Position numbers and translations under genes: made by a program
Origin: Diplonema japonicum
Lineage: Eukaryota > Protista > Euglenozoa: Diplonemea
Assembly (NCBI GenBank): GCA_964019335.1
Contig: OZ025679.1
Span: forward strand, 62,001 to 126,000
Length of the DNA: 64,000 nucleotides
Direction of reading: 5' to 3'
Shown: in pieces, positions 1,155 to 28,585 of the stretch
Layout of the letters: every line of letters begins with the position of its first letter
Position numbering within the stretch: the first letter of the stretch is position 1
The notes under the pieces: model-generated
Databases searched by the model: none
What the model saw: only the letters and a program-made list of their open reading frames with translations
Told to the model about the DNA's origin: nothing

Positions 1155-1596
1155 GGGGGGGTCATATGGTCCTTAAAAAGGGCCACTTTTTGCCCTTTTT
1201 CAGGCTCTTCGCCAAGGACATTTTGGGCCCTTAAAAAAACTGTAACCACCCCAAAAGTGCCCACAAATCACCCAAACCCCCGTTTCCCGATGGTTTCCGG
1301 CCCCAGAAGTGCCCAGAATCATGTTCTAATTTTGGGACCCCCGTTTGGTACTTTCCCTGTGTAATCCTAGGGAACATAAAATAGGGGGCCCTAGGATTAC
1401 ATAGGGAAAGTACCAAACGGGGGCCCCAAAATTAGAACATGATTCTGGGCACTTCTGGGGCCGGAAACCATCGGGAAACGGGGGTTTGGGTGATTTGTGG
1501 GCACTTTTGGGGTGGTTGCAGTTTTCTTAAGGGCCCAAAATGCCCTTGGCGAAGAGCCTGAAAAAGGGCAAATAACGACCCCCTTATGACCCCCCC
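1155..1596. mobile_element. Foldback/MITE-like element: near-perfect ~185-bp inverted arms around a ~16-nt spacer
   Basis: 1189-1372 is the reverse complement of 1389-1572 with few mismatches; outer ends GGGGGGTCATA...TATGACCCCCC. Confidence 0.8.
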
Positions 1597-12020: not shown

Positions 12021-12131
12021 GAGGGGTCAGTGGCCAAGCCATTCGGTTCTGTCACGAATCGCGGAAATCCCTTGAATTAATCCCATAGTTTGGAGCCACA
12101 CAGGCCCTTTCGGGTATGACCTCTTGAAATA

Positions 12132-12133
<2 letters not shown>
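12021..12133. ncRNA. Unidentified 113-nt structured multicopy sequence, copy 1 (candidate small RNA gene)
   Basis: Differs by 1-2 nt from 26187-26299 and 27564-27676 although flanks diverge. Terminal helix GAGGGGTCA/TGACCTCTT, inner GTGGC/GCCAC helix and CCC-TTTC-GGG hairpin; bounded by A and T runs. Confidence 0.45.
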
Positions 12134-22475: not shown

Positions 22476-25400
22476 TTGTACAACTACCGAAAGGCAGACT
22501 GGGAAGCGTTCCAGAACTTTGTAGACGGGAGGCTTCGAGGGCTGGACGGTTGCAAACGGGTCACGACCTTCGCCAAGAGGATCCAAGAAGCCCTGAGCGA
22601 AGCCGCAACAAGGCACATACCTCGGCACGGGTGTTTCACCGAGAGGAAGCCATGGTGGAACAGCGAACTGGACACGGCCTTTGAAGAAAGGGACACCATC
22701 CTCAGGGGGGAATCCGAAGATCACGCAGGGCTCGCTGGGCTCAACAATGCAGTCAACGAGACGGTGAAGGCATCCAAAGAGAAGTCATGGAGGAGCCTCT
22801 GCTCCAAGTTCAGCTCCTCCAAGAACTTGCCTGCGGCATTCAAGGCAGTCAAGGAGCTCGACGGCAGGTCATGGAGGCCACCGATGCCCCCCCTTCAACA
22901 CGGCGACACTCTTCTCACAGGCAACAAGGCTAGGGCCGATCGTCTCGGACGCTACTACGAGACGATCTGCGGAGACGACACTGTCCCTGGTCTCGACACA
23001 ACAGGACAGACGCAGGAACCCTACGAGGGCGGAACGGGCTACTTCACGATGGACGAACTGCTGAGACAACTGCTCAGGACGAGAACGAAGAGTGCTGCAG
23101 GCGACGATGGAGTCTTCAACGTGATGCTGATGCGTCTGGGTAGGGAATCCCTGAGAATCGTTCTACAGCTGTTCAATCTCTCCTGGGCGAGCGGGCAAGT
23201 TCCGGACACGTGGAAACTGGCACTAGTCGTCTCGATCCCGAAGCCGGGCAAAGACCCCACGAAGATTGAGTCCTACCGCCCCATCAGCCTGACGAGCTGC
23301 CTCGGCAAGCTCATGGAAAGGATGGTCGAGGCCCGCGTGACGTATCTACTTGACTCCCCGACAACGATGGTAGAGGGACTTCACCCCGCCCAGGCTGGCT
23401 TCAGGAAAGGGAGGTCCACCGAGGAGCAGGTTGCCGCCATCGTGCAGCATGTGACGATAAAAAGGAACGCCGAAGTTAAGGAGGCATGCCTCACCATACT
23501 CTTTGACTTCTCAAAGGCGTTCGACAGGGTCAACCACTCAGAAGATGTCTCAGAAGCGCTTCCCCACGGCCTACACCAGGTGGGTTTCCTCCTTCCTAAC
23601 GTCCAGAACAGCGAGGGTAGTCGTGGAGGGTGTCAAGGGGACCCCTTACAAAATCAAGAGTGGCGTGCCTCAAGGTTCTGTACTCGGTCCAGTGCTGTTC
23701 ACCATCTTCGTGGACGACCTAGCGAGGGAACTTGAGGGTCTGGCTGGGCTCTCCACGATCTACGCGGACGACGTCGCGGTAGTAGTCTCTGCCACAACAA
23801 GGACTGAGCTCGAGGCCAGGGCCACGGCGGTAGTGGGTGCAGTCGAAGACTGGTGTACACGATGGGGGATGCAGTTGAGCAGGGAGAAGACGCTGTACGT
23901 CCCCACCCCCAAATGCGAACCGTACGACTTCCACGTCTACTTCCCCTCGACCGGGGCGACGCATCCGGGCTTCGAATTCCAGCCGCTGGAGCTCAAGGGC
24001 CGACTCATCGCCGGGGGACCTACTCACCTGATCGGGAGGAGGCTCCTGTCCGTTAACCGCACGGCCACGACACGACGCGACGTCTCTGCACTCGTCTCCA
24101 AAGGGCTGGTGTATGAATTCTCCACGGCCGTCCCCGTCGCGAGGCGTGACAGGGCCAAGTATCTAGGGGTCATCCTTGACGCTGACTTGTCTTTCGGTGC
24201 CCATGCCCGCGACATCATCGAGAGATACGACAAACGAATTCGCATACTGCGGCTCCTCTCCGGCTCGTCCTGGGGCAGTTCCGCAGCATCACTCAGGTCC
24301 TTGTACCTGGCCTACGTCCTACCGGTGTTCACCTACTCGATTGGCATCTTCTTCGCACTGATGTCTGCTCAAGACAGGAAGGCACTGTGCATGAGGCACG
24401 ATGAGGCAGCCCGACGAATCACGGGGTGCGTCAAGAACACCTCCACCTCGGCTGTACTGTGTGAGGCCCGCTTGCGCCCGCTCGACCTGATGGCCGACGC
24501 TGCTTCTGCCATTCTACTGCAGAGGGCACTGAGGTGGGTGGGAACCCCGGTGAACAGGGTGGTCAGGGGTGCAGCTACCGCAGGATGGGCCTTGGGAGCG
24601 CTGAAGGCGACGAGGAGTTCTGGGCTGAGTGCGGTTGCTTCCCTACCGCTAGGGCCTGATACGAGAGCCCCCCCCTGGGCGGAAGGCATCCACGTCGATC
24701 CCTACGCCACCGACACCAGGAGGACACTCCCCGACGATGTGAGGGCGGCAGCGGCTGCGGAAAAGCTGGACGAGATCCCAAGCGGCGCTCTGGTAGTGTA
24801 CACGGACGGCTCGGTGATAAGGGGGAGAGGGGGAGCTGGGGTTGCCCTCAGAGTCCCCGACATGGACCTCACCCTTACCACCTCTCACGGGGCCGGCATG
24901 GTCTCCACACCCATGTGCGCCGAGGGCACCGCTATCCTGATGGGGTTGAAGGAGGCTGCGGAGGTGTACAAAACGGTCGTGAACCTGAGGGGCCGCCCTC
25001 TCTACCTGCTGACCGACTCACAGACGATGCTGCGGAGGCTCGCTGGAGGCCCCGGACAGCAGAGGGAGTCCACGGACAGACGGATCTGGGATGCCGCTTC
25101 CTGGCTCAGGGCCAAACGCTCTGGTGATGTGCACTTCTGGTACATCCCCTCCCACTGCGGTGTGACGGGGAACGAGCTCGCCGACGGAGCGGCCAGGGAC
25201 GGGCTGTCGAAGTCGCCTTGCGGGGTTAGCTACCGCTCCAGCAAGGCGGCCATAAAAGCGTGGCTGAGAGGAAGGTCGCGTGCGAGATACAACAGCGACT
25301 CCCCCGGCCACCACCGCCTCGTCACCGGTGGCGAATGTCTCTCTCTCCCACCACTCAGTAGGAGGGATGAGGTCCTGATCATTCGGCTCCGGACCGGACA

Positions 25401-25692
25401 CACGCCTTTGAATAGGGGGTACCTCCAGCTCAAGGGACCCCTGAGGGCTGAGGGGAGTCATCACCTCACCTGCCCCGCCTGCAACGTTCAATCACCGCTC
25501 GACGCTGATCACCTGCTGAGGGGCTGTCATTCTCTGGCTCCCACAGCTAAGTCCTTCTACGACACTGGGCTGCCGCTCCGCGCGCTGCTTTCCAAGCACT
25601 CCGCCGAGGTCTGCGCCTTCATCGAGGCCTCCGGGCTCTTATCATGGTCTGAGTGTGGGATCTTCCCCCCGGCCGACGCAGCACAAGGGTGA
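22476..25692 (+). pseudogene. Disrupted RT-RNase H ORF: no endonuclease domain, frameshift at ~23540
   Basis: ORF 22476-23735 carries the RT N-half to FDRVNH; the protein continues in the frame of ORF 23503-25692 (QKMSQKRFP...). Confidence 0.9.
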
Positions 25693-26049
25693 TCGTGAGC
25701 CCATTATAGACCCCCCCCCTACCCCTTTGTCCCCCCCCCCCCCCCCCCCCACACACACACTCACACGCAAATGGGCCAAGAAACAACCTCCCGGGAGGCA
25801 GCCACAGGGAAGGCCGGGAGGGCGCAGGGCGCAGCAAGAGAACGCCCCTGCGTTCAGCCTCGAGGGGACCGCCCCGAATGTAATCAGCCAGGTCGGCTGT
25901 CCCAGGAAGGGGGAACGGAGCACCGAAGGGAAGGTTCAGCCCACGTGGTGGCCCTCTCGGTTACTCCAGACAAAAGACTGGACACACCCCACACCCCTCC
26001 CCCCACCCCCAGTTTCCCCCCAGTGGTTATTATTGCAAAAAAAAAAAAA
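22476..26049 (+). mobile_element. 5'-truncated non-LTR retrotransposon (Ingi/I-group-like: RT, RNase H, C-terminal Cys/His motif) with poly-A tail and TSD
   Basis: RT motifs YRPISLTS, QAGFRKGRST, DFSKAFD, GVPQGSVLGP, YADD and KYLGV. RNase H motifs YTDGS, AE..AI, TDSQ and PSHCGVTGNELAD. Also LRTGH...CPAC...HLL..C. TSD AAAAAACTAGGGCGAG at 22460-22475 and 26044-26059. Confidence 0.95.
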
Positions 26050-26053
26050 CTAG

Positions 26054-26135
26054 GGCGAGATGGCCGAGCGGTCTAAGGCGTTGCGTTTAGGCCGCAATAT
26101 CTCCGGATGCGTGGGTTCAAACCCCACTCTCGTCA
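26054..26135 (+). tRNA. trnL: tRNA-Leu(TAG)
   Basis: GGCGAGA/TCTCGTC acceptor, TGGCCGAGCGGTCTAAGGC D arm, TTGCG-TTTAGGC-CGCAA, long variable arm, GTGGG-TTCAAAC-CCCAC; T-run terminator. Confidence 0.96.
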
Positions 26136-26186
26136 CTTTTTCTTTTTTTGCCTTAACAATTGCCTCAAGGAATAAAAAAAAAAAAA

Positions 26187-26299
26187 GAGGGGTCAGTGGC
26201 TAAGCCATTCGGTTCTGTCACGAATCGCGGAAATCCCTTGAATTAATCCCATAGTTTGGAGCCACACAGGCCCTTTCGGGTATGACCTCTTGAAATACC
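26187..26299. ncRNA. Unidentified 113-nt structured multicopy sequence, copy 2
   Basis: See copy 1; begins 52 nt downstream of the tRNA-Leu 3' end. Confidence 0.45.
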
Positions 26300-27533
26300 T
26301 TTTTTAATAATAATAATAATAATAAATGTACCACTGTCGTGCGAAGCTAAAGGCTGGGGGGGGAGGGATAGGGCAGGAGGCCTGAAGGGCCTCCTACAAG
26401 TGAAAGGGGGAACAAGAGGGGCTGACAAATTTTTTGTAAAAGTTTAAAGACAACAGCACCCTTTGGCCGAACCTCCGGGATTTCAAGGTGTGGGGTACCT
26501 CGTCAGTGCTCGTAGGCACACCGGCACGGAGGCATCCCCTTCAGCCGGTTTTGTTGGGCTGTGGAGCCTTTGGAAAATAAAAATGTAAGGAAAACATAAC
26601 CAGAGAGGAAGAAAGAAGTTGGGGTGCACGACAGGGCAAAATAAAAAGGGAAGACATGGGGGATGAGAGTACTATTACTAAAAAAGTTTAAATCTACTTC
26701 TACTTCTTGCCGGCCCGGCACAGCACGCCTCGCACCCAGCAGCACACGCCACGCAGACAGACCAGCGCACCTCCACCGCCACCAGTTCTCTTCCAGTGTC
26801 CCCGTGCACCCCACCGTCGATCCGTTTATCTGTACCCAGTTCGGCTACCGATCTGTCTGGCCTTCCAGTTGCGACAGGGCGGTCATTGCCTGAAGGGCGC
26901 CGGGATCAACACTGTGGCCTCCACTCCGCGCGAGACCGGTCTCAGCCTCACGTCCCTCGGATGGGGAACGCTGGAACACTGGGCGACGCCGCCGCCCGCA
27001 TCACACCACAACACAGCGGAACCAGCACAAACAAACCGTACGCCACTCACCAGCGACACCAGCCACAACCCACCGCTCCTGTTCACCCCACCGTTGTCCG
27101 AGTACCTGTACCCAGTTAGCCTGTGTCCTGACTGGCCTTTCAGTTGGGGCAGGACTGACAACGCTACAAGGGCGCCGGGAACAACCTGTGGCCTCCACTG
27201 TGCGCGAGATCGGTCTCAGCCTCTCGACGCTGGTGGAATGAACAGGAACGGTGGGTGTCACCGCCGCACGCAACCACGCACACGCCGCGCGATGGGAGAG
27301 AATGCCTTTTGCTCAGACCGAGTCTGAGTGGTCTTACACCCCCGCTACCGGTGCCCCGATAGCGGCTTGTGCCAAACAGGCCGACTTCGCTCCAGCACCC
27401 TCCCCGACACGCCTTCGCGCTTTCGCACCACAGCCCTCCCTGGCCTGCGGTCCCAGGGGCCACCACGAGGAGGACAGCGCAGGATACTTCACACCATGTT
27501 GTTGTTCTTTTTTTTATGTGTACCCCAACCCCC
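26300..27533 (-). mobile_element. ~1.23-kb non-autonomous retroposon with 5' HDV-like ribozyme and (ATT)n-A tail
   Basis: The minus-strand 5' end coincides with the ribozyme G1. The 3' end reads ...CAGTGGTACATTTATTATT...AAAAAA. Flanked by direct repeats 26156-~26317 and 27534-~27693; no credible ORF. Confidence 0.7.
27416..27533 (-). ncRNA. HDV-like self-cleaving ribozyme (predicted)
   Basis: Minus strand: P1 GGGGGTT/GGCCCCT, hairpin-forming J1/2, P2 TGCGCT/AGCGCG, P3 (G)TCC/GGT (imperfect), L3 TCCTCGT, P1.1 GG, P4 ACCGCAG/CTGTGGT, J4/2 GCGAA. Confidence 0.75.
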
Positions 27534-27563
27534 ACAATTGCCTCAAGGAATAAAAAAAAAAAA

Positions 27564-27676
27564 GAGGGGTCAGTGGCTAAGCCATTCGGTTCTGTCACGA
27601 ATCGCGGAAATCCCTTGAATTAATCCCATAGTTTGGAGCCACACAGGCCCTTTCGGGTATAACCTCTTGAAATACC
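27564..27676. ncRNA. Unidentified 113-nt structured multicopy sequence, copy 3
   Basis: One substitution relative to copy 2 (TATAACC versus TATGACC). Confidence 0.45.
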
Positions 27677-28585
27677 TTTTTAATAATAATAATTATTCCA
27701 CTACCAGGCGGGGGGGATGGGGGGCGGAGAAAGTTGAAACCATAAAAATTGGGAAGGGAAGGTTAAAAACAGTCTCTCTTACTGAGCCATATCGGGGGGG
27801 ACCTCTTGCTCGTTTGCTCGACCTCTTGTATATTTTCCTGGGGCCCCCGACATCCACCTTTCTTATTTTTTCCCCATTCCCCCGCCACGCAGCTCTTGGG
27901 CCTCGAAGGCTTCGGCTGTCACCAAATAAAGACAACCCCAAATATTAAAGGACGGCGATGAGATCCCTAATTTTGATTTATCCAGCCACAGGGACCCCAC
28001 CATCTGCTGGTTTTGTTGGGCTGTGGGAGCCTAAAATATAAATTTGAAAAGGAAATGTAAAAGGAAAAGTCAAGTTCAGAACTCAACTTCCACAAAGAAG
28101 GGAGGAATGCATAACTAGAAAAGGAGCCTGGTAGGGAAAATAAAAAGAAAGGGAAACCAATGGGGGAGGGGGAAAAAGAATTACTGGTTACTATTTCTAT
28201 AAAAAAAACCCCCCTTCTCAGCTGCGAAAGATGTTTTTCCAACGAGACTCCCTATCGCGTAATGACGCGGGCGCACCAGGTAGGCCGGCGAGTGCTGTGG
28301 AGTCAATCGTCAGCGGGGAGGAAGAGGTTGTGAGAGGCGAAGTAGAGGAGGGGGACACGTTGGCAGATAACCCACCGGCCTTGGGCTTTCCCCGTGTGCG
28401 ACAGGTCACACAATGGTGTTCCTTACACCCCTATGCGGTTCTGCCTGCCTACCCACCAGAAGTCGGACCTTCACCGAGAGACTGTGTCACACAATGGACT
28501 TACATCCCTTGAGGTGGTCCACCGTACTTGACGCCTCCGCTCCGATTCTCTCTCCGCGGGAACCCAGCCTACAACTCTGGCCTAC
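27677..28585 (-). mobile_element. Second, diverged and probably truncated retroposon-like unit with (ATT)n-A tail
   Basis: Shares GGTTTTGTTGGGCTGTGG and downstream A/G-rich blocks with 26546-26700. Tail abuts GGTATTTC; ATACCTTTTT recurs at 28586-28595 as a possible TSD. Confidence 0.5.

What the first reader, a model, noticed from the sequence alone, without database searches (positions are those of the whole stretch)
27416..27533. HDV-like ribozyme exactly at the 5' end of a non-coding retroposon
Seen: the minus strand reads GGGGGTT-(45 nt hairpin-forming linker, GGGTAC/GTATCC)-TGCGCT-G-TCC-TCCTCGT-GGT-GGCCCCT-GG-G-ACCGCAG-(11 nt)-CTGTGGT-GCGAA-AGCGCG. Established: this is the order of the HDV/CPEB3 nested double pseudoknot, with G1.U wobble, L3 UYCHCGY, P1.1 GG and catalytic C in GCGAA (here at 27425). 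HDV-like ribozymes process the 5' ends of R2, RTE and L1Tc/ingi retroelements. The predicted cleavage site (before 27533) coincides to the nucleotide with the boundary of the flanking direct repeat, which is independent support. It does not resemble the trypanosomatid Pr77 signature as I recall it. P3 is imperfect (2 WC pairs plus a mismatch or bulge), so this copy may be slow or dead. Inference: a ribozyme-headed SINE/SIDER-like family that cuts itself out of read-through transcripts.
Basis: partly seen in the sequence, partly recalled or inferred. Interest (0 to 1): 0.9.

Follow-up and report, generated by a model that had tools for sequence, protein, structure and literature searches.

The report
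Ribozyme-headed retroposon next to Pol III genes
The stretch is a well-formed HDV-like self-cleaving ribozyme fold that forms the first 118 bases of a young 1.2-1.35 kb non-coding jumping element of a diplonemid-type protist. This is a known retrotransposon trick in a lineage where no paper I found reports it, and this scan has already met the same family elsewhere in this genome.

Summary
**Observation confirmed.** The minus strand 27533-27416 reads exactly as described. It fits the HDV-like nested double pseudoknot:
- P1 has 7 bp with a G1·U wobble.
- A 45-nt J1/2 hairpin follows.
- P2 has 6 bp.
- P3 has 2 G-C pairs plus a U·U mismatch.
- L3 is UCCUCGU and P1.1 is CC/GG.
- P4 has 7 bp.
- J4/2 is GCGAA, with the candidate catalytic C at 27425.

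**The element.** All ten full-length copies (97-100% identical) begin at G1, with unrelated flanks. Four of them have 8-11 nt target-site duplications. 5'-truncated copies also exist.

**Support for the fold.** At least seven other repeat-associated head types in this genome carry the same core. P2 and P4 covary across them. P1 also covaries, although it was never in the search model.

**Likely partner and target.** The element encodes no recognisable protein. Its 3' tail matches that of a very young 6.2-kb LINE (endonuclease, reverse transcriptase, RNase H). It inserts a few bases upstream of tRNA genes. In this copy it abuts a 113-nt RNA-like gene that ends in a T-run.

**Limits.** Self-cleavage is inferred, not shown. 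Rfam models do not reach threshold. The P3 mismatch is family-wide, not a defect of this copy.

**Status.** This is a new member of a known kind. The scan already described another copy of this family (s1-861318) and sister families (s1-865580, s1-861312).

The parts
27527..27533 (-). P1 5' strand GGGGGUU. The predicted cleavage site is immediately 5' of G1 (27533).
   Evidence: Pairs 7/7 with 27461-27455. It is the first base of homology in all 10 full-length copies.
27482..27526 (-). J1/2 insertion of 45 nt, forming a hairpin (a P1.2-like peripheral domain) that closes directly between P1 and P2.
   Evidence: GGGUAC/GUAUCC plus inner pairs; -5.0 kcal/mol when folded alone. Such domains activate large HDV-like ribozymes (PMC4908430).
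27476..27481 (-). P2 5' strand UGCGCU.
   Evidence: Pairs 6/6 with 27421-27416. Five of 6 P2 pairs covary across families.
27462..27474 (-). P3 (UCC/GGU: U·U plus two C-G pairs) enclosing L3 UCCUCGU.
   Evidence: The other families have A-U or G-C at the first P3 pair. L3 and P3 align letter for letter with the Rfam drz-agam-1 consensus, except for that first base.
27455..27461 (-). P1 3' strand GGCCCCU.
   Evidence: P1 covaries across families, for example GGUGGGG/CCCCACU.
27453..27454 (-). The GG of P1.1, pairing with the CC of L3 (27470-27469).
   Evidence: Invariant in all families, so it is uninformative for covariation.
27427..27451 (-). P4 hairpin: ACCGCAG, an 11-nt loop, CUGUGGU.
   Evidence: 7/7 pairs. 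Six of 7 pairs covary across families. Two copies carry C-to-U changes that keep G·U pairs.
27422..27426 (-). J4/2 GCGAA, with the candidate catalytic cytosine at 27425.
   Evidence: The other families have GCAAA, GCGAA or GCUGAGA at this position.
27416..27421 (-). P2 3' strand AGCGCG, the 3' end of the ribozyme module.
   Evidence: A related element in another organism's run keeps 27413-27533 but lacks 27283-27412, so the module behaves as a unit.
26300..27533 (-). The whole non-coding retroposon copy, 1234 nt, ending in (AUU)6 A6. It carries a 120-nt internal deletion after element position 1083, compared with the ~1.35-kb copies elsewhere. It also contains an internal ~200-nt duplication.
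   Evidence: No Pfam domain in any of its ORFs.
27534..27676 (-). Upstream copy of the 143/144-nt flanking direct repeat. It comprises the 113-nt RNA-like gene, its T-run and 18 further nt.
26156..26299 (-). Downstream copy of the flanking direct repeat. The element's A-tail abuts the first base of the 113-nt RNA-like gene.

Best explanation
The 118 bases at 27533-27416 (minus strand) are an HDV-like self-cleaving ribozyme module. It forms the head of a non-autonomous non-LTR retroposon, called family A here.

**Proposed mechanism**
1. A copy is transcribed as part of a longer RNA, from whatever lies upstream (inferred).
2. The head folds into the nested double pseudoknot. The cytosine at 27425 and a bound metal ion catalyse cleavage just 5' of G1. 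The element RNA is left with a 5'-OH at G1 (established chemistry of the family; not shown here).
3. The RNA's 3' end resembles the 3' end of a very young 6.2-kb LINE: about 75% identical over 400 nt, and nearly identical over the last 50 nt. The LINE's endonuclease/reverse-transcriptase protein recognises this tail (inferred).
4. That protein nicks DNA a few bases upstream of RNA polymerase III genes and copies the RNA by target-primed reverse transcription.
5. A full-length cDNA ends at G1. Each new copy therefore starts with the ribozyme and can free itself from any transcript (shown as a pattern in the copies).

**Shown:** the fold, the exact 5' ends, the target-site duplications, the shared tail, the target preference, and covariation across families.

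**Inferred:** cleavage, the source of transcription, and which protein mobilises the element.
For: - **Fold.** All helices pair as proposed. My descriptor gives a unique hit in the window against 0.15 per shuffled window.
- **Exact 5' ends.** Ten full-length copies, 97-100% identical, all start at G1 with unrelated upstream flanks.
- **Retroposition.** Four copies have 8-11 nt target-site duplications that end 0-3 nt before G1. 5'-truncated copies exist.
- **Other families.** A covariance model built from this family's core found heads of other repeat families in the genome. A second model found at least 84 heads in about eight score classes.
- **Covariation of modelled helices.** Across these families 98% of cells pair, against 48-82% when partners are slid. 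11-12 of 16-18 pairs show compensatory changes.
- **Covariation of P1.** The P1 5' strand was never in the model, yet it is complementary in every family. It changes to GGUGGGG/CCCCACU in two of them.
- **Family B.** Its 10 copies with flanks also start at G1.
- **Leave-family-out model.** A model trained without family A hits only 27481-27416 in the window (47.9 bits).
- **Relatives.** Related elements in other organisms' runs begin GGGGGCUGGGG with different flanks. One keeps the head while lacking the 130 nt after it.
- **Partner LINE.** The LINE tail is shared. The LINE encodes APE, RT and RNase H domains and has at least 16 RT copies at 100% identity over the full RT stretch queried.
- **Target.** tRNA genes start within about 12 nt of the A-tail in 5 of 10 full-length copies.
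- **Precedents.** R2, L1Tc/NARTc and the ingi/SIDER elements (PMC3774820, PMC3185411, PMC4035085).
Against: - No cleavage or RNA 5'-end data. The available runs were contigs only, and none is on record as RNA.
- Rfam finds nothing at its gathering thresholds. The best match is drz-agam-1 at 15.2 bits, E = 1.8.
- P3 has a U·U where every other family has a Watson-Crick pair.
- The nested minimum-free-energy fold is not the HDV fold. It pairs L3 (CCUCCUC) with the P4 loop (GGGAGGG), and its energy is no better than that of shuffles (z = 0.36).
- The covariation alignments were fitted to the model, and the other families were found with a model trained on this one. Those statistics and the E-value are therefore partly circular.
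- This copy lies antisense to the neighbouring long ORFs, and a T-run-terminated gene sits directly upstream of it. Its own transcription is doubtful.
Confidence: 0.8

Rival explanations
1. The 5' end at G1 is set by transcription initiation from an internal promoter in the first ~120 nt, as Pr77 does in L1Tc. The HDV-like fold is then secondary or only a second function.
For: - In trypanosomatid L1Tc the same 77 nt act as both promoter and ribozyme (PMC3383444), so the two roles are not exclusive.
- The exact 5' ends of the copies fit a fixed start site equally well.
- This copy has a terminated gene directly upstream, which makes read-through less obvious.
Against: - Families with quite different head sequences keep the same pairing scheme through compensatory changes. 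That points to selection on RNA structure rather than on a DNA promoter motif.
- The consensus scan for sigma-70-type promoters does not apply to this organism and was not used.
Confidence: 0.1
2. The fold is a genuine HDV-like relic, but in family A it is catalytically impaired by the U·U in P3 and by a competing L3/P4-loop helix. Something else then produces the 5' ends.
For: - Family A is the only family with a mismatch in P3.
- The minimum-free-energy structure favours a non-HDV helix.
Against: - Every copy of a young family (97-100% identical) carries the U·U, yet full-length insertions end precisely at G1.
- Relatives in other organisms' runs do the same.
- The mismatch is at the outermost P3 pair, and co-transcriptional folding would form P1 and P3 before the P4 loop is made (inference).
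Confidence: 0.08
3. It is a chance resemblance: a G+C-rich repeat end that happens to satisfy an HDV-like descriptor.
For: - The descriptor hits 0.15 times per shuffled window.
- Rfam scores are below threshold.
- The folding energy is unremarkable.
Against: - The match starts on the first base of the repeat.
- The same architecture heads several unrelated repeat families, with covarying P1, P2 and P4.
Confidence: 0.02

Closest known systems
L1TcRz / Pr77 ribozyme of Trypanosoma cruzi L1Tc and its non-autonomous partner NARTc, and the ingi/RIME and SIDER relatives (PMC3185411, PMC3383444, PMC4035085)
   Same: - An HDV-like ribozyme occupies the first nucleotides of a non-LTR retrotransposon and of its non-coding, non-autonomous derivatives.
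- The host is a euglenozoan with polycistronic transcription.
- The candidate partner LINE has the same endonuclease, reverse transcriptase, RNase H domain order.
   Different: - The core here looks like the classical HDV/drz-Agam type (L3 UCCUCGU, J4/2 GCGAA) and has a 45-nt J1/2 hairpin.
- Similarity to the Pr77 signature was not tested.
- The candidate partner LINE does not share the head. Its copies begin with the spliced leader.
- Insertion is next to Pol III genes.
- Promoter activity is unknown.
R2 retrotransposon 5' ribozyme and R2-derived non-autonomous elements (PMC3774820, PMC3414825)
   Same: - An HDV-like ribozyme cuts the element out of a co-transcript at, or close to, the 5' junction.
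- Non-autonomous derivatives keep the ribozyme and the 3' end needed for target-primed reverse transcription.
   Different: - R2 is specific for a 28S rDNA site and uses a restriction-like endonuclease.
- Here the targets are the starts of tRNA genes and other genes that look Pol III-transcribed, and the partner has an APE-type endonuclease.
Mosquito drz-Agam-1 and drz-Agam-2 HDV-like ribozymes (Rfam RF01787; PMC4908430)
   Same: - The P3/L3 core differs from the drz-agam-1 consensus ACC-UCCUCGU-GGU by one base.
- A structured J1/2 domain bridges P1 and P2, as in drz-Agam-2-1.
   Different: - The Rfam score is far below the gathering score (15.2 against 37 bits).
- The host lineage is unrelated.
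- P3 carries a U·U.
tRNA-gene-targeting retrotransposons: Dictyostelium TRE5-A, yeast Ty3 and Ty1 (PMC3159450, PMC5006619, PMC5911963)
   Same: Insertion is oriented and falls in a narrow window upstream of Pol III-transcribed genes in a gene-dense genome.
   Different: - The distance here is only a few bases to about 12 nt from the mature tRNA 5' end, against about 50 bp for TRE5-A.
- I know of no ribozyme head in those elements.
- The targeting mechanism here is unknown.

Membership tests
HDV-like self-cleaving ribozymes | Strand order of the nested double pseudoknot: P1, (J1/2), P2, P3, L3, P3', P1', P1.1, P4, J4/2, P2'. | tested here: met
   The descriptor hit and explicit pair lists.
HDV-like self-cleaving ribozymes | Cleavage-site purine at +1 forming the terminal (usually G·U) pair of P1. 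| tested here: met
   G1 (27533) pairs with U79 (27455). The pair is G·U in all families except one copy, which has A-U.
HDV-like self-cleaving ribozymes | P1.1: two C-G pairs between L3 and the bases just 3' of P1. | tested here: met
   C64 and C65 pair with G81 and G80. The pairs are invariant across families, so there is no covariation to judge.
HDV-like self-cleaving ribozymes | Catalytic cytosine in J4/2. | tested here: met
   GCGAA with its C at 27425. A C is present at the equivalent place in most other heads; L021, L060 and L013:3353 read differently there. Its catalytic role is not testable here.
HDV-like self-cleaving ribozymes | P3 helix of 3 bp closing a 7-8 nt L3. | tested here: inconclusive
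   Two C-G pairs plus a U·U in all family-A copies. The other families have A-U or G-C.
HDV-like self-cleaving ribozymes | Helices supported by compensatory substitutions. | tested here: met
   Five of 6 P2 pairs and 6 of 7 P4 pairs covary. P1 covaries although it was outside the model. Caveat: the alignments were fitted to the model, and copies within family A are too similar to test.
HDV-like self-cleaving ribozymes | A match to a curated Rfam HDV-family model above its gathering score. | tested here: not met
   No hit at gathering. drz-agam-1 scores 15.2 bits against 37. RF00094 and RF01787 find nothing useful genome-wide. These models cover narrow sub-families.
HDV-like self-cleaving ribozymes | Mg2+-dependent self-scission giving 5'-OH and 2',3'-cyclic phosphate ends. 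| not testable with these tools
   No raw RNA reads were available.
Non-autonomous non-LTR retroposon (SINE / NARTc-like) | Target-site duplications, an A-rich 3' tail and 5'-truncated copies. | tested here: met
   Duplications of 8-11 nt in four copies and 143/144 nt here. The tail is (ATT)n A(n).
Non-autonomous non-LTR retroposon (SINE / NARTc-like) | No reverse transcriptase of its own; 3' end shared with an autonomous LINE. | tested here: met
   No Pfam domain in its ORFs. The last ~400 nt are 75% identical to the 3' end of the L078-type LINE (APE-RT-RNase H).
Trypanosomatid Pr77-hallmark elements (L1Tc/ingi clade) | The conserved 77-nt Pr77 sequence signature at the 5' end. | not tested

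The most novel reading that the evidence does not exclude
In this diplonemid-type genome two different RNA-processing devices define retroelement 5' ends within one parasitic partnership. The autonomous 6.2-kb LINE carries the host spliced leader as its head. The non-coding element that borrows its 3' tail uses a classical HDV-like ribozyme. Both home to within a few bases of the starts of genes that look Pol III-transcribed. That would be a combination of ribozyme processing, trans-splicing mimicry and Pol III targeting not described for any retrotransposon system. It would also extend HDV-like ribozymes in Euglenozoa beyond trypanosomatids.
Probability: 0.45. Interest if true: 0.6.

Novelty: new member of a known kind. 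Interest (0 to 1): 0.42.

Why it matters
HDV-like ribozymes at retrotransposon 5' ends are well established in animals and trypanosomatids. The principle is therefore not new.

What this adds:
- **A new lineage.** The example comes from a free-living, diplonemid-type euglenozoan. Neither the Diplonema papillatum genome paper nor my full-text searches mention such ribozymes in this group.
- **A classical core.** The ribozyme has the HDV/drz-Agam-type core. Whether it resembles the trypanosomatid Pr77 signature was not tested here.
- **A set of test sequences.** The genome holds about eight head types with natural covariation. These could serve ribozyme biochemistry, including a natural U·U variant in P3 and variants with P1.2-like domains.
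- **An unusual system.** The ribozyme belongs to a retroposon system that targets Pol III genes and whose LINE partner is headed by the spliced leader.

For genome annotation, these heads mark retroposon 5' ends precisely.

Tried and rejected
- **Rfam scans.** Scans at gathering thresholds and at permissive E-values gave no significant HDV-family hit. RF01787 and RF00094 run on the whole genome gave nothing useful.
- **Folding energy.** Minimum-free-energy folding cannot represent the pseudoknot. It gave a competing structure with z = 0.36, so it neither supports nor refutes the fold.
- **RNA evidence.** No listed run is on record as RNA, and all were served as contigs. 5' ends could not be mapped.
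- **More loci.** I tried to fetch further loci, including the closer A-like heads at C74:116787, C14:695888 and C14:772127 and full copies of other LINE families.
- **The 113-nt gene.** I considered whether the neighbouring 113-nt gene is a spliced-leader RNA intron half or a U snRNA. Rfam gave no hit, and I left it open.
- **Head of L080.** I considered that the head found in L080 might belong to a LINE. It belongs to a separate 1.35-kb non-coding element (family D) stacked in front of a truncated LINE.

Full report
**1. The observation**

I checked each proposed helix explicitly:

| Element | Sequence | Pairs |
|---|---|---|
| P1 | GGGGGUU / GGCCCCU | 7 of 7, first pair G1·U |
| J1/2 hairpin (45 nt) | closed by GGGUAC / GUAUCC | 6 bp |
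| P2 | UGCGCU / AGCGCG | 6 of 6 |
| P3 | UCC / GGU | 2 C-G plus a U·U |
| L3 | UCCUCGU | its CC pairs with the GG after P1 (P1.1) |
| P4 | ACCGCAG / CUGUGGU, 11-nt loop | 7 of 7 |
| J4/2 | GCGAA | C at 27425 |

I wrote a generic HDV-like descriptor after seeing the site, so it is somewhat tailored.
- It finds this one site, and no other, on either strand of the window.
- Sixty dinucleotide-preserving shuffles gave 0.15 hits per window.

The fold alone is therefore only mildly improbable. The weight of the evidence lies in where it sits.

**2. It is the first base of a mobile element**

- A genome search with 181 nt around the site returned 11 places. Nine of them match from the position of G1 or one base before it; two cover only part of the head.
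- With the longer query, ten full-length copies (97-100% identical) and several 5'-truncated ones appeared.
- Printing the flanks shows that all ten full-length copies begin at GGGGGTT, after unrelated upstream sequence.
- The element ends in (ATT)n followed by 6-10 A.
- Four copies have clear target-site duplications of 8-11 nt: AAAAAATCAA, AAAAAAATTGC, GCAAACTT and AAAAAAAGTC. Each ends 0-3 nt before G1.

These are the marks of target-primed reverse transcription of an RNA whose 5' end is G1.

In the window copy, the flanking direct repeat is 143 and 144 nt long (27676-27534 and 26299-26156).

This copy is 1234 nt (27533-26300). It has a 120-nt internal deletion compared with the ~1.35-kb copies elsewhere. 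No ORF in it has a Pfam domain.

**3. Is the fold real? Evidence from other families**

The family's own copies are too alike to test covariation. The only stem changes are two C-to-U transitions in P4, and both keep G·U pairs. I therefore looked for other families.

- *First model.* I built a covariance model of the core (P2, P3, P4) from family A and searched the whole genome. Besides the family-A heads, it found about 19 weaker hits.
- *These are heads of other repeats.* Family B has the same core with quite different P2 and P4 sequences. In the 10 copies with normal flanks, homology begins at GGGGCUGG. One further copy carries the spliced leader joined one base inside its head.
- *Second model.* Built from all these heads, it found at least 84 heads in roughly eight score classes. 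This is a lower bound, because only 150 candidates were scored.
- *Pair counts.* On the model-fitted alignments 98% of cells form standard pairs, against 48-82% when the 3' partners are slid. 11-12 of 16-18 pairs show changes on both sides, concentrated in P2 and P4.
- *Circularity.* The hits were selected and aligned by a structural model, so these statistics are partly circular.
- *P1 as an independent test.* The 5' strand of P1 was never in any model. In every family the bases at the repeat's 5' end are complementary to that family's own P1 3' strand. They change together: GGGGGUU/GGCCCCU, GGGGCU/GGCCCU, GGGGGUU/AGCCCCU, GGUGGGG/CCCCACU and GGUGGG/CCCACU.
- *Leave-family-out model.* A model trained without family A hits only 27481-27416 in the window, at 47.9 bits. 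Its E-value is inflated, because its training set was itself found with family A.

**4. Relatives in other organisms**

Public runs of at least two other, coded organisms contain contigs 90-95% identical to the element.
- The contigs' ends read GGGGGCUGGGG, followed by different flanks. The head is therefore at the element's end there too, and position 6 of P1 is C (C-G instead of U·G).
- One contig lacks 27283-27412 but keeps 27413-27533, so the ribozyme is retained as a module.
- These runs are contigs, and none is on record as RNA. They say nothing about transcript ends.

**5. What argues for caution**

- Rfam gives no HDV-family hit at gathering thresholds. The best is drz-agam-1 at 15.2 bits, E = 1.8, although its alignment places P3, L3 and P4 just as proposed. 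Whole-genome runs of RF01787 and RF00094 were uninformative.
- The nested minimum-free-energy fold pairs L3 (CCUCCUC) with the P4 loop (GGGAGGG). It is no more stable than shuffles.
- Family A is the only family with a mismatch in P3. The U·U is present in every family-A head recovered, in a young family that has kept inserting with ends at G1. I therefore read it as tolerated, not as a dead copy.
- The J1/2 hairpin closes directly between P1 and P2, like the activating peripheral domain of large HDV-like ribozymes (PMC4908430).

**6. Partner and targets**

- *Shared tail.* The last ~400 nt of the element are about 75% identical to the 3' end of a 6.2-kb LINE. The final ~50 nt are nearly identical.
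- *The LINE.* It encodes a 449-aa ORF1 and a 1441-aa ORF2 with endonuclease, reverse transcriptase and RNase H domains. At least 16 copies are 100% identical over the full RT stretch queried.
- *Its 5' end.* Its two full-length copies in hand begin with the host spliced leader minus the first two or three bases, not with a ribozyme.
- *The host.* The leader differs at two positions from the "Euglenozoa 14" spliced-leader entry listed in PMC3795323, which I recall as the Diplonema leader (recollection, not checked). The host is therefore a diplonemid-type euglenozoan.
- *A LINE with a ribozyme head.* In another LINE family (49% RT identity), a ribozyme head lies 3.14-3.15 kb upstream of the RT at four loci. 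That spacing matches the distance expected from a LINE 5' end.
- *Target preference.* Five of ten full-length family-A copies end within about 12 nt of a tRNA gene on the same strand. Other copies are stacked behind the tails of earlier insertions.
- *This copy.* In the window the element abuts the first base of a 113-nt RNA-like gene that ends in a T-run. That gene is probably also a Pol III gene, and Rfam has no match for it.

**7. How it most likely works**

- The element is transcribed within a longer RNA (inferred).
- The head cleaves 5' of G1 (inferred from the fold and from the family's known chemistry).
- The LINE protein recognises the shared tail and inserts a copy next to a Pol III gene. 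The pattern is shown; the actors are inferred.

This copy lies antisense to the neighbouring long ORFs and has a terminated gene just upstream. It may well be silent.

**8. Comparison and novelty**

- The closest known systems are L1Tc/NARTc and ingi/SIDER in trypanosomatids (PMC3185411, PMC4035085), and R2 with its non-autonomous derivatives (PMC3774820, PMC3414825).
- The behaviour is the same kind. The differences are the classical HDV/drz-Agam-like core, the partner LINE headed by the spliced leader, and the Pol III-gene targeting. That targeting recalls Dictyostelium TRE5-A and yeast Ty3 (PMC3159450, PMC5911963).
- I found no paper that reports HDV-like ribozymes in diplonemids or other non-trypanosomatid euglenozoans.
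- The scan's own earlier notes already describe another copy of this family (s1-861318), sister families (s1-865580, s1-861312), the tRNA targeting (s1-866995) and the spliced-leader-headed LINEs (s1-859342). My results agree with them and were obtained from the sequence, independently.

**Verdict.** This is a real and well-supported feature, a new member of a known kind, of moderate interest.

Noticed in passing
window 12021-12133, 26187-26299 and 27564-27676 (minus strand): A 113-nt conserved, RNA-like gene ending in a T-run, in three copies (98-100% identical). Retroposon tails abut its first base (GGTATTTC), just as they abut tRNA genes, so it is probably Pol III-transcribed. It has no Rfam match, and only two weak or partial matches elsewhere in the genome.
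   Followed up: partly
window 27534-27676 and 26156-26299: The element is flanked by a 143/144-nt direct repeat that contains the whole 113-nt gene, its T-run and 18 more bases. This is either an unusually long target-site duplication or a local duplication. Other copies have 8-11 nt duplications.
   Followed up: partly
L078:3258-3295 and L079:3356-3393: Full-length copies of the 6.2-kb LINE (endonuclease, RT, RNase H) begin with the host spliced leader lacking its first 2-3 bases. At least 16 copies are 100% identical over the full RT stretch queried. The scan has reported this repeatedly elsewhere in the genome.
   Followed up: partly
L066, about 55 nt upstream of the core at 1501-1558 (minus strand): One copy of ribozyme-headed family B carries the spliced leader joined one base inside its head (…TTATTG|GGCTGG). 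It is apparently a retroposed trans-spliced RNA. An A before G1, behind a T-run, would make a splice acceptor.
   Followed up: no
G000 C52:219987/223136, C61:7101/3952, C15:159317/156171, C52:134337/131199: A distinct HDV-like head type (P1 GGUGGG/CCCACU) lies 3.14-3.15 kb upstream of the RT domain of a LINE family with 49% RT identity, at four loci. This suggests autonomous LINEs with ribozyme heads. The sequences could not be fetched.
   Followed up: partly
window 27684-28580 (minus strand): A 5'-truncated copy, 99% identical, of another ribozyme-headed 1.35-kb non-coding family (family D). It ends at the upstream copy of the 113-nt gene. Elsewhere (L077) this family ends directly at a tRNA-Thr gene.
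   Followed up: partly
window 22476-26050 (plus strand): A LINE with RT and RNase H domains, its frame broken between 23503 and 23735. It ends in a poly(A) tail about three bases before tRNA-Leu (26054-26135). Its 3' tail differs from that of family A.
   Followed up: partly
window 27465-27475 with 27434-27441 (minus strand): L3 and its flank (GUCCUCCUC) can pair with the P4 loop (GGGAGGGC). The minimum-free-energy fold prefers this helix over the ribozyme fold. It could be a misfolding trap or a switch.
   Followed up: no
window 26801-27272 (minus strand): The element contains an internal duplication of about 200 nt (element 262-456 against 534-733, 75% identical).
   Followed up: no
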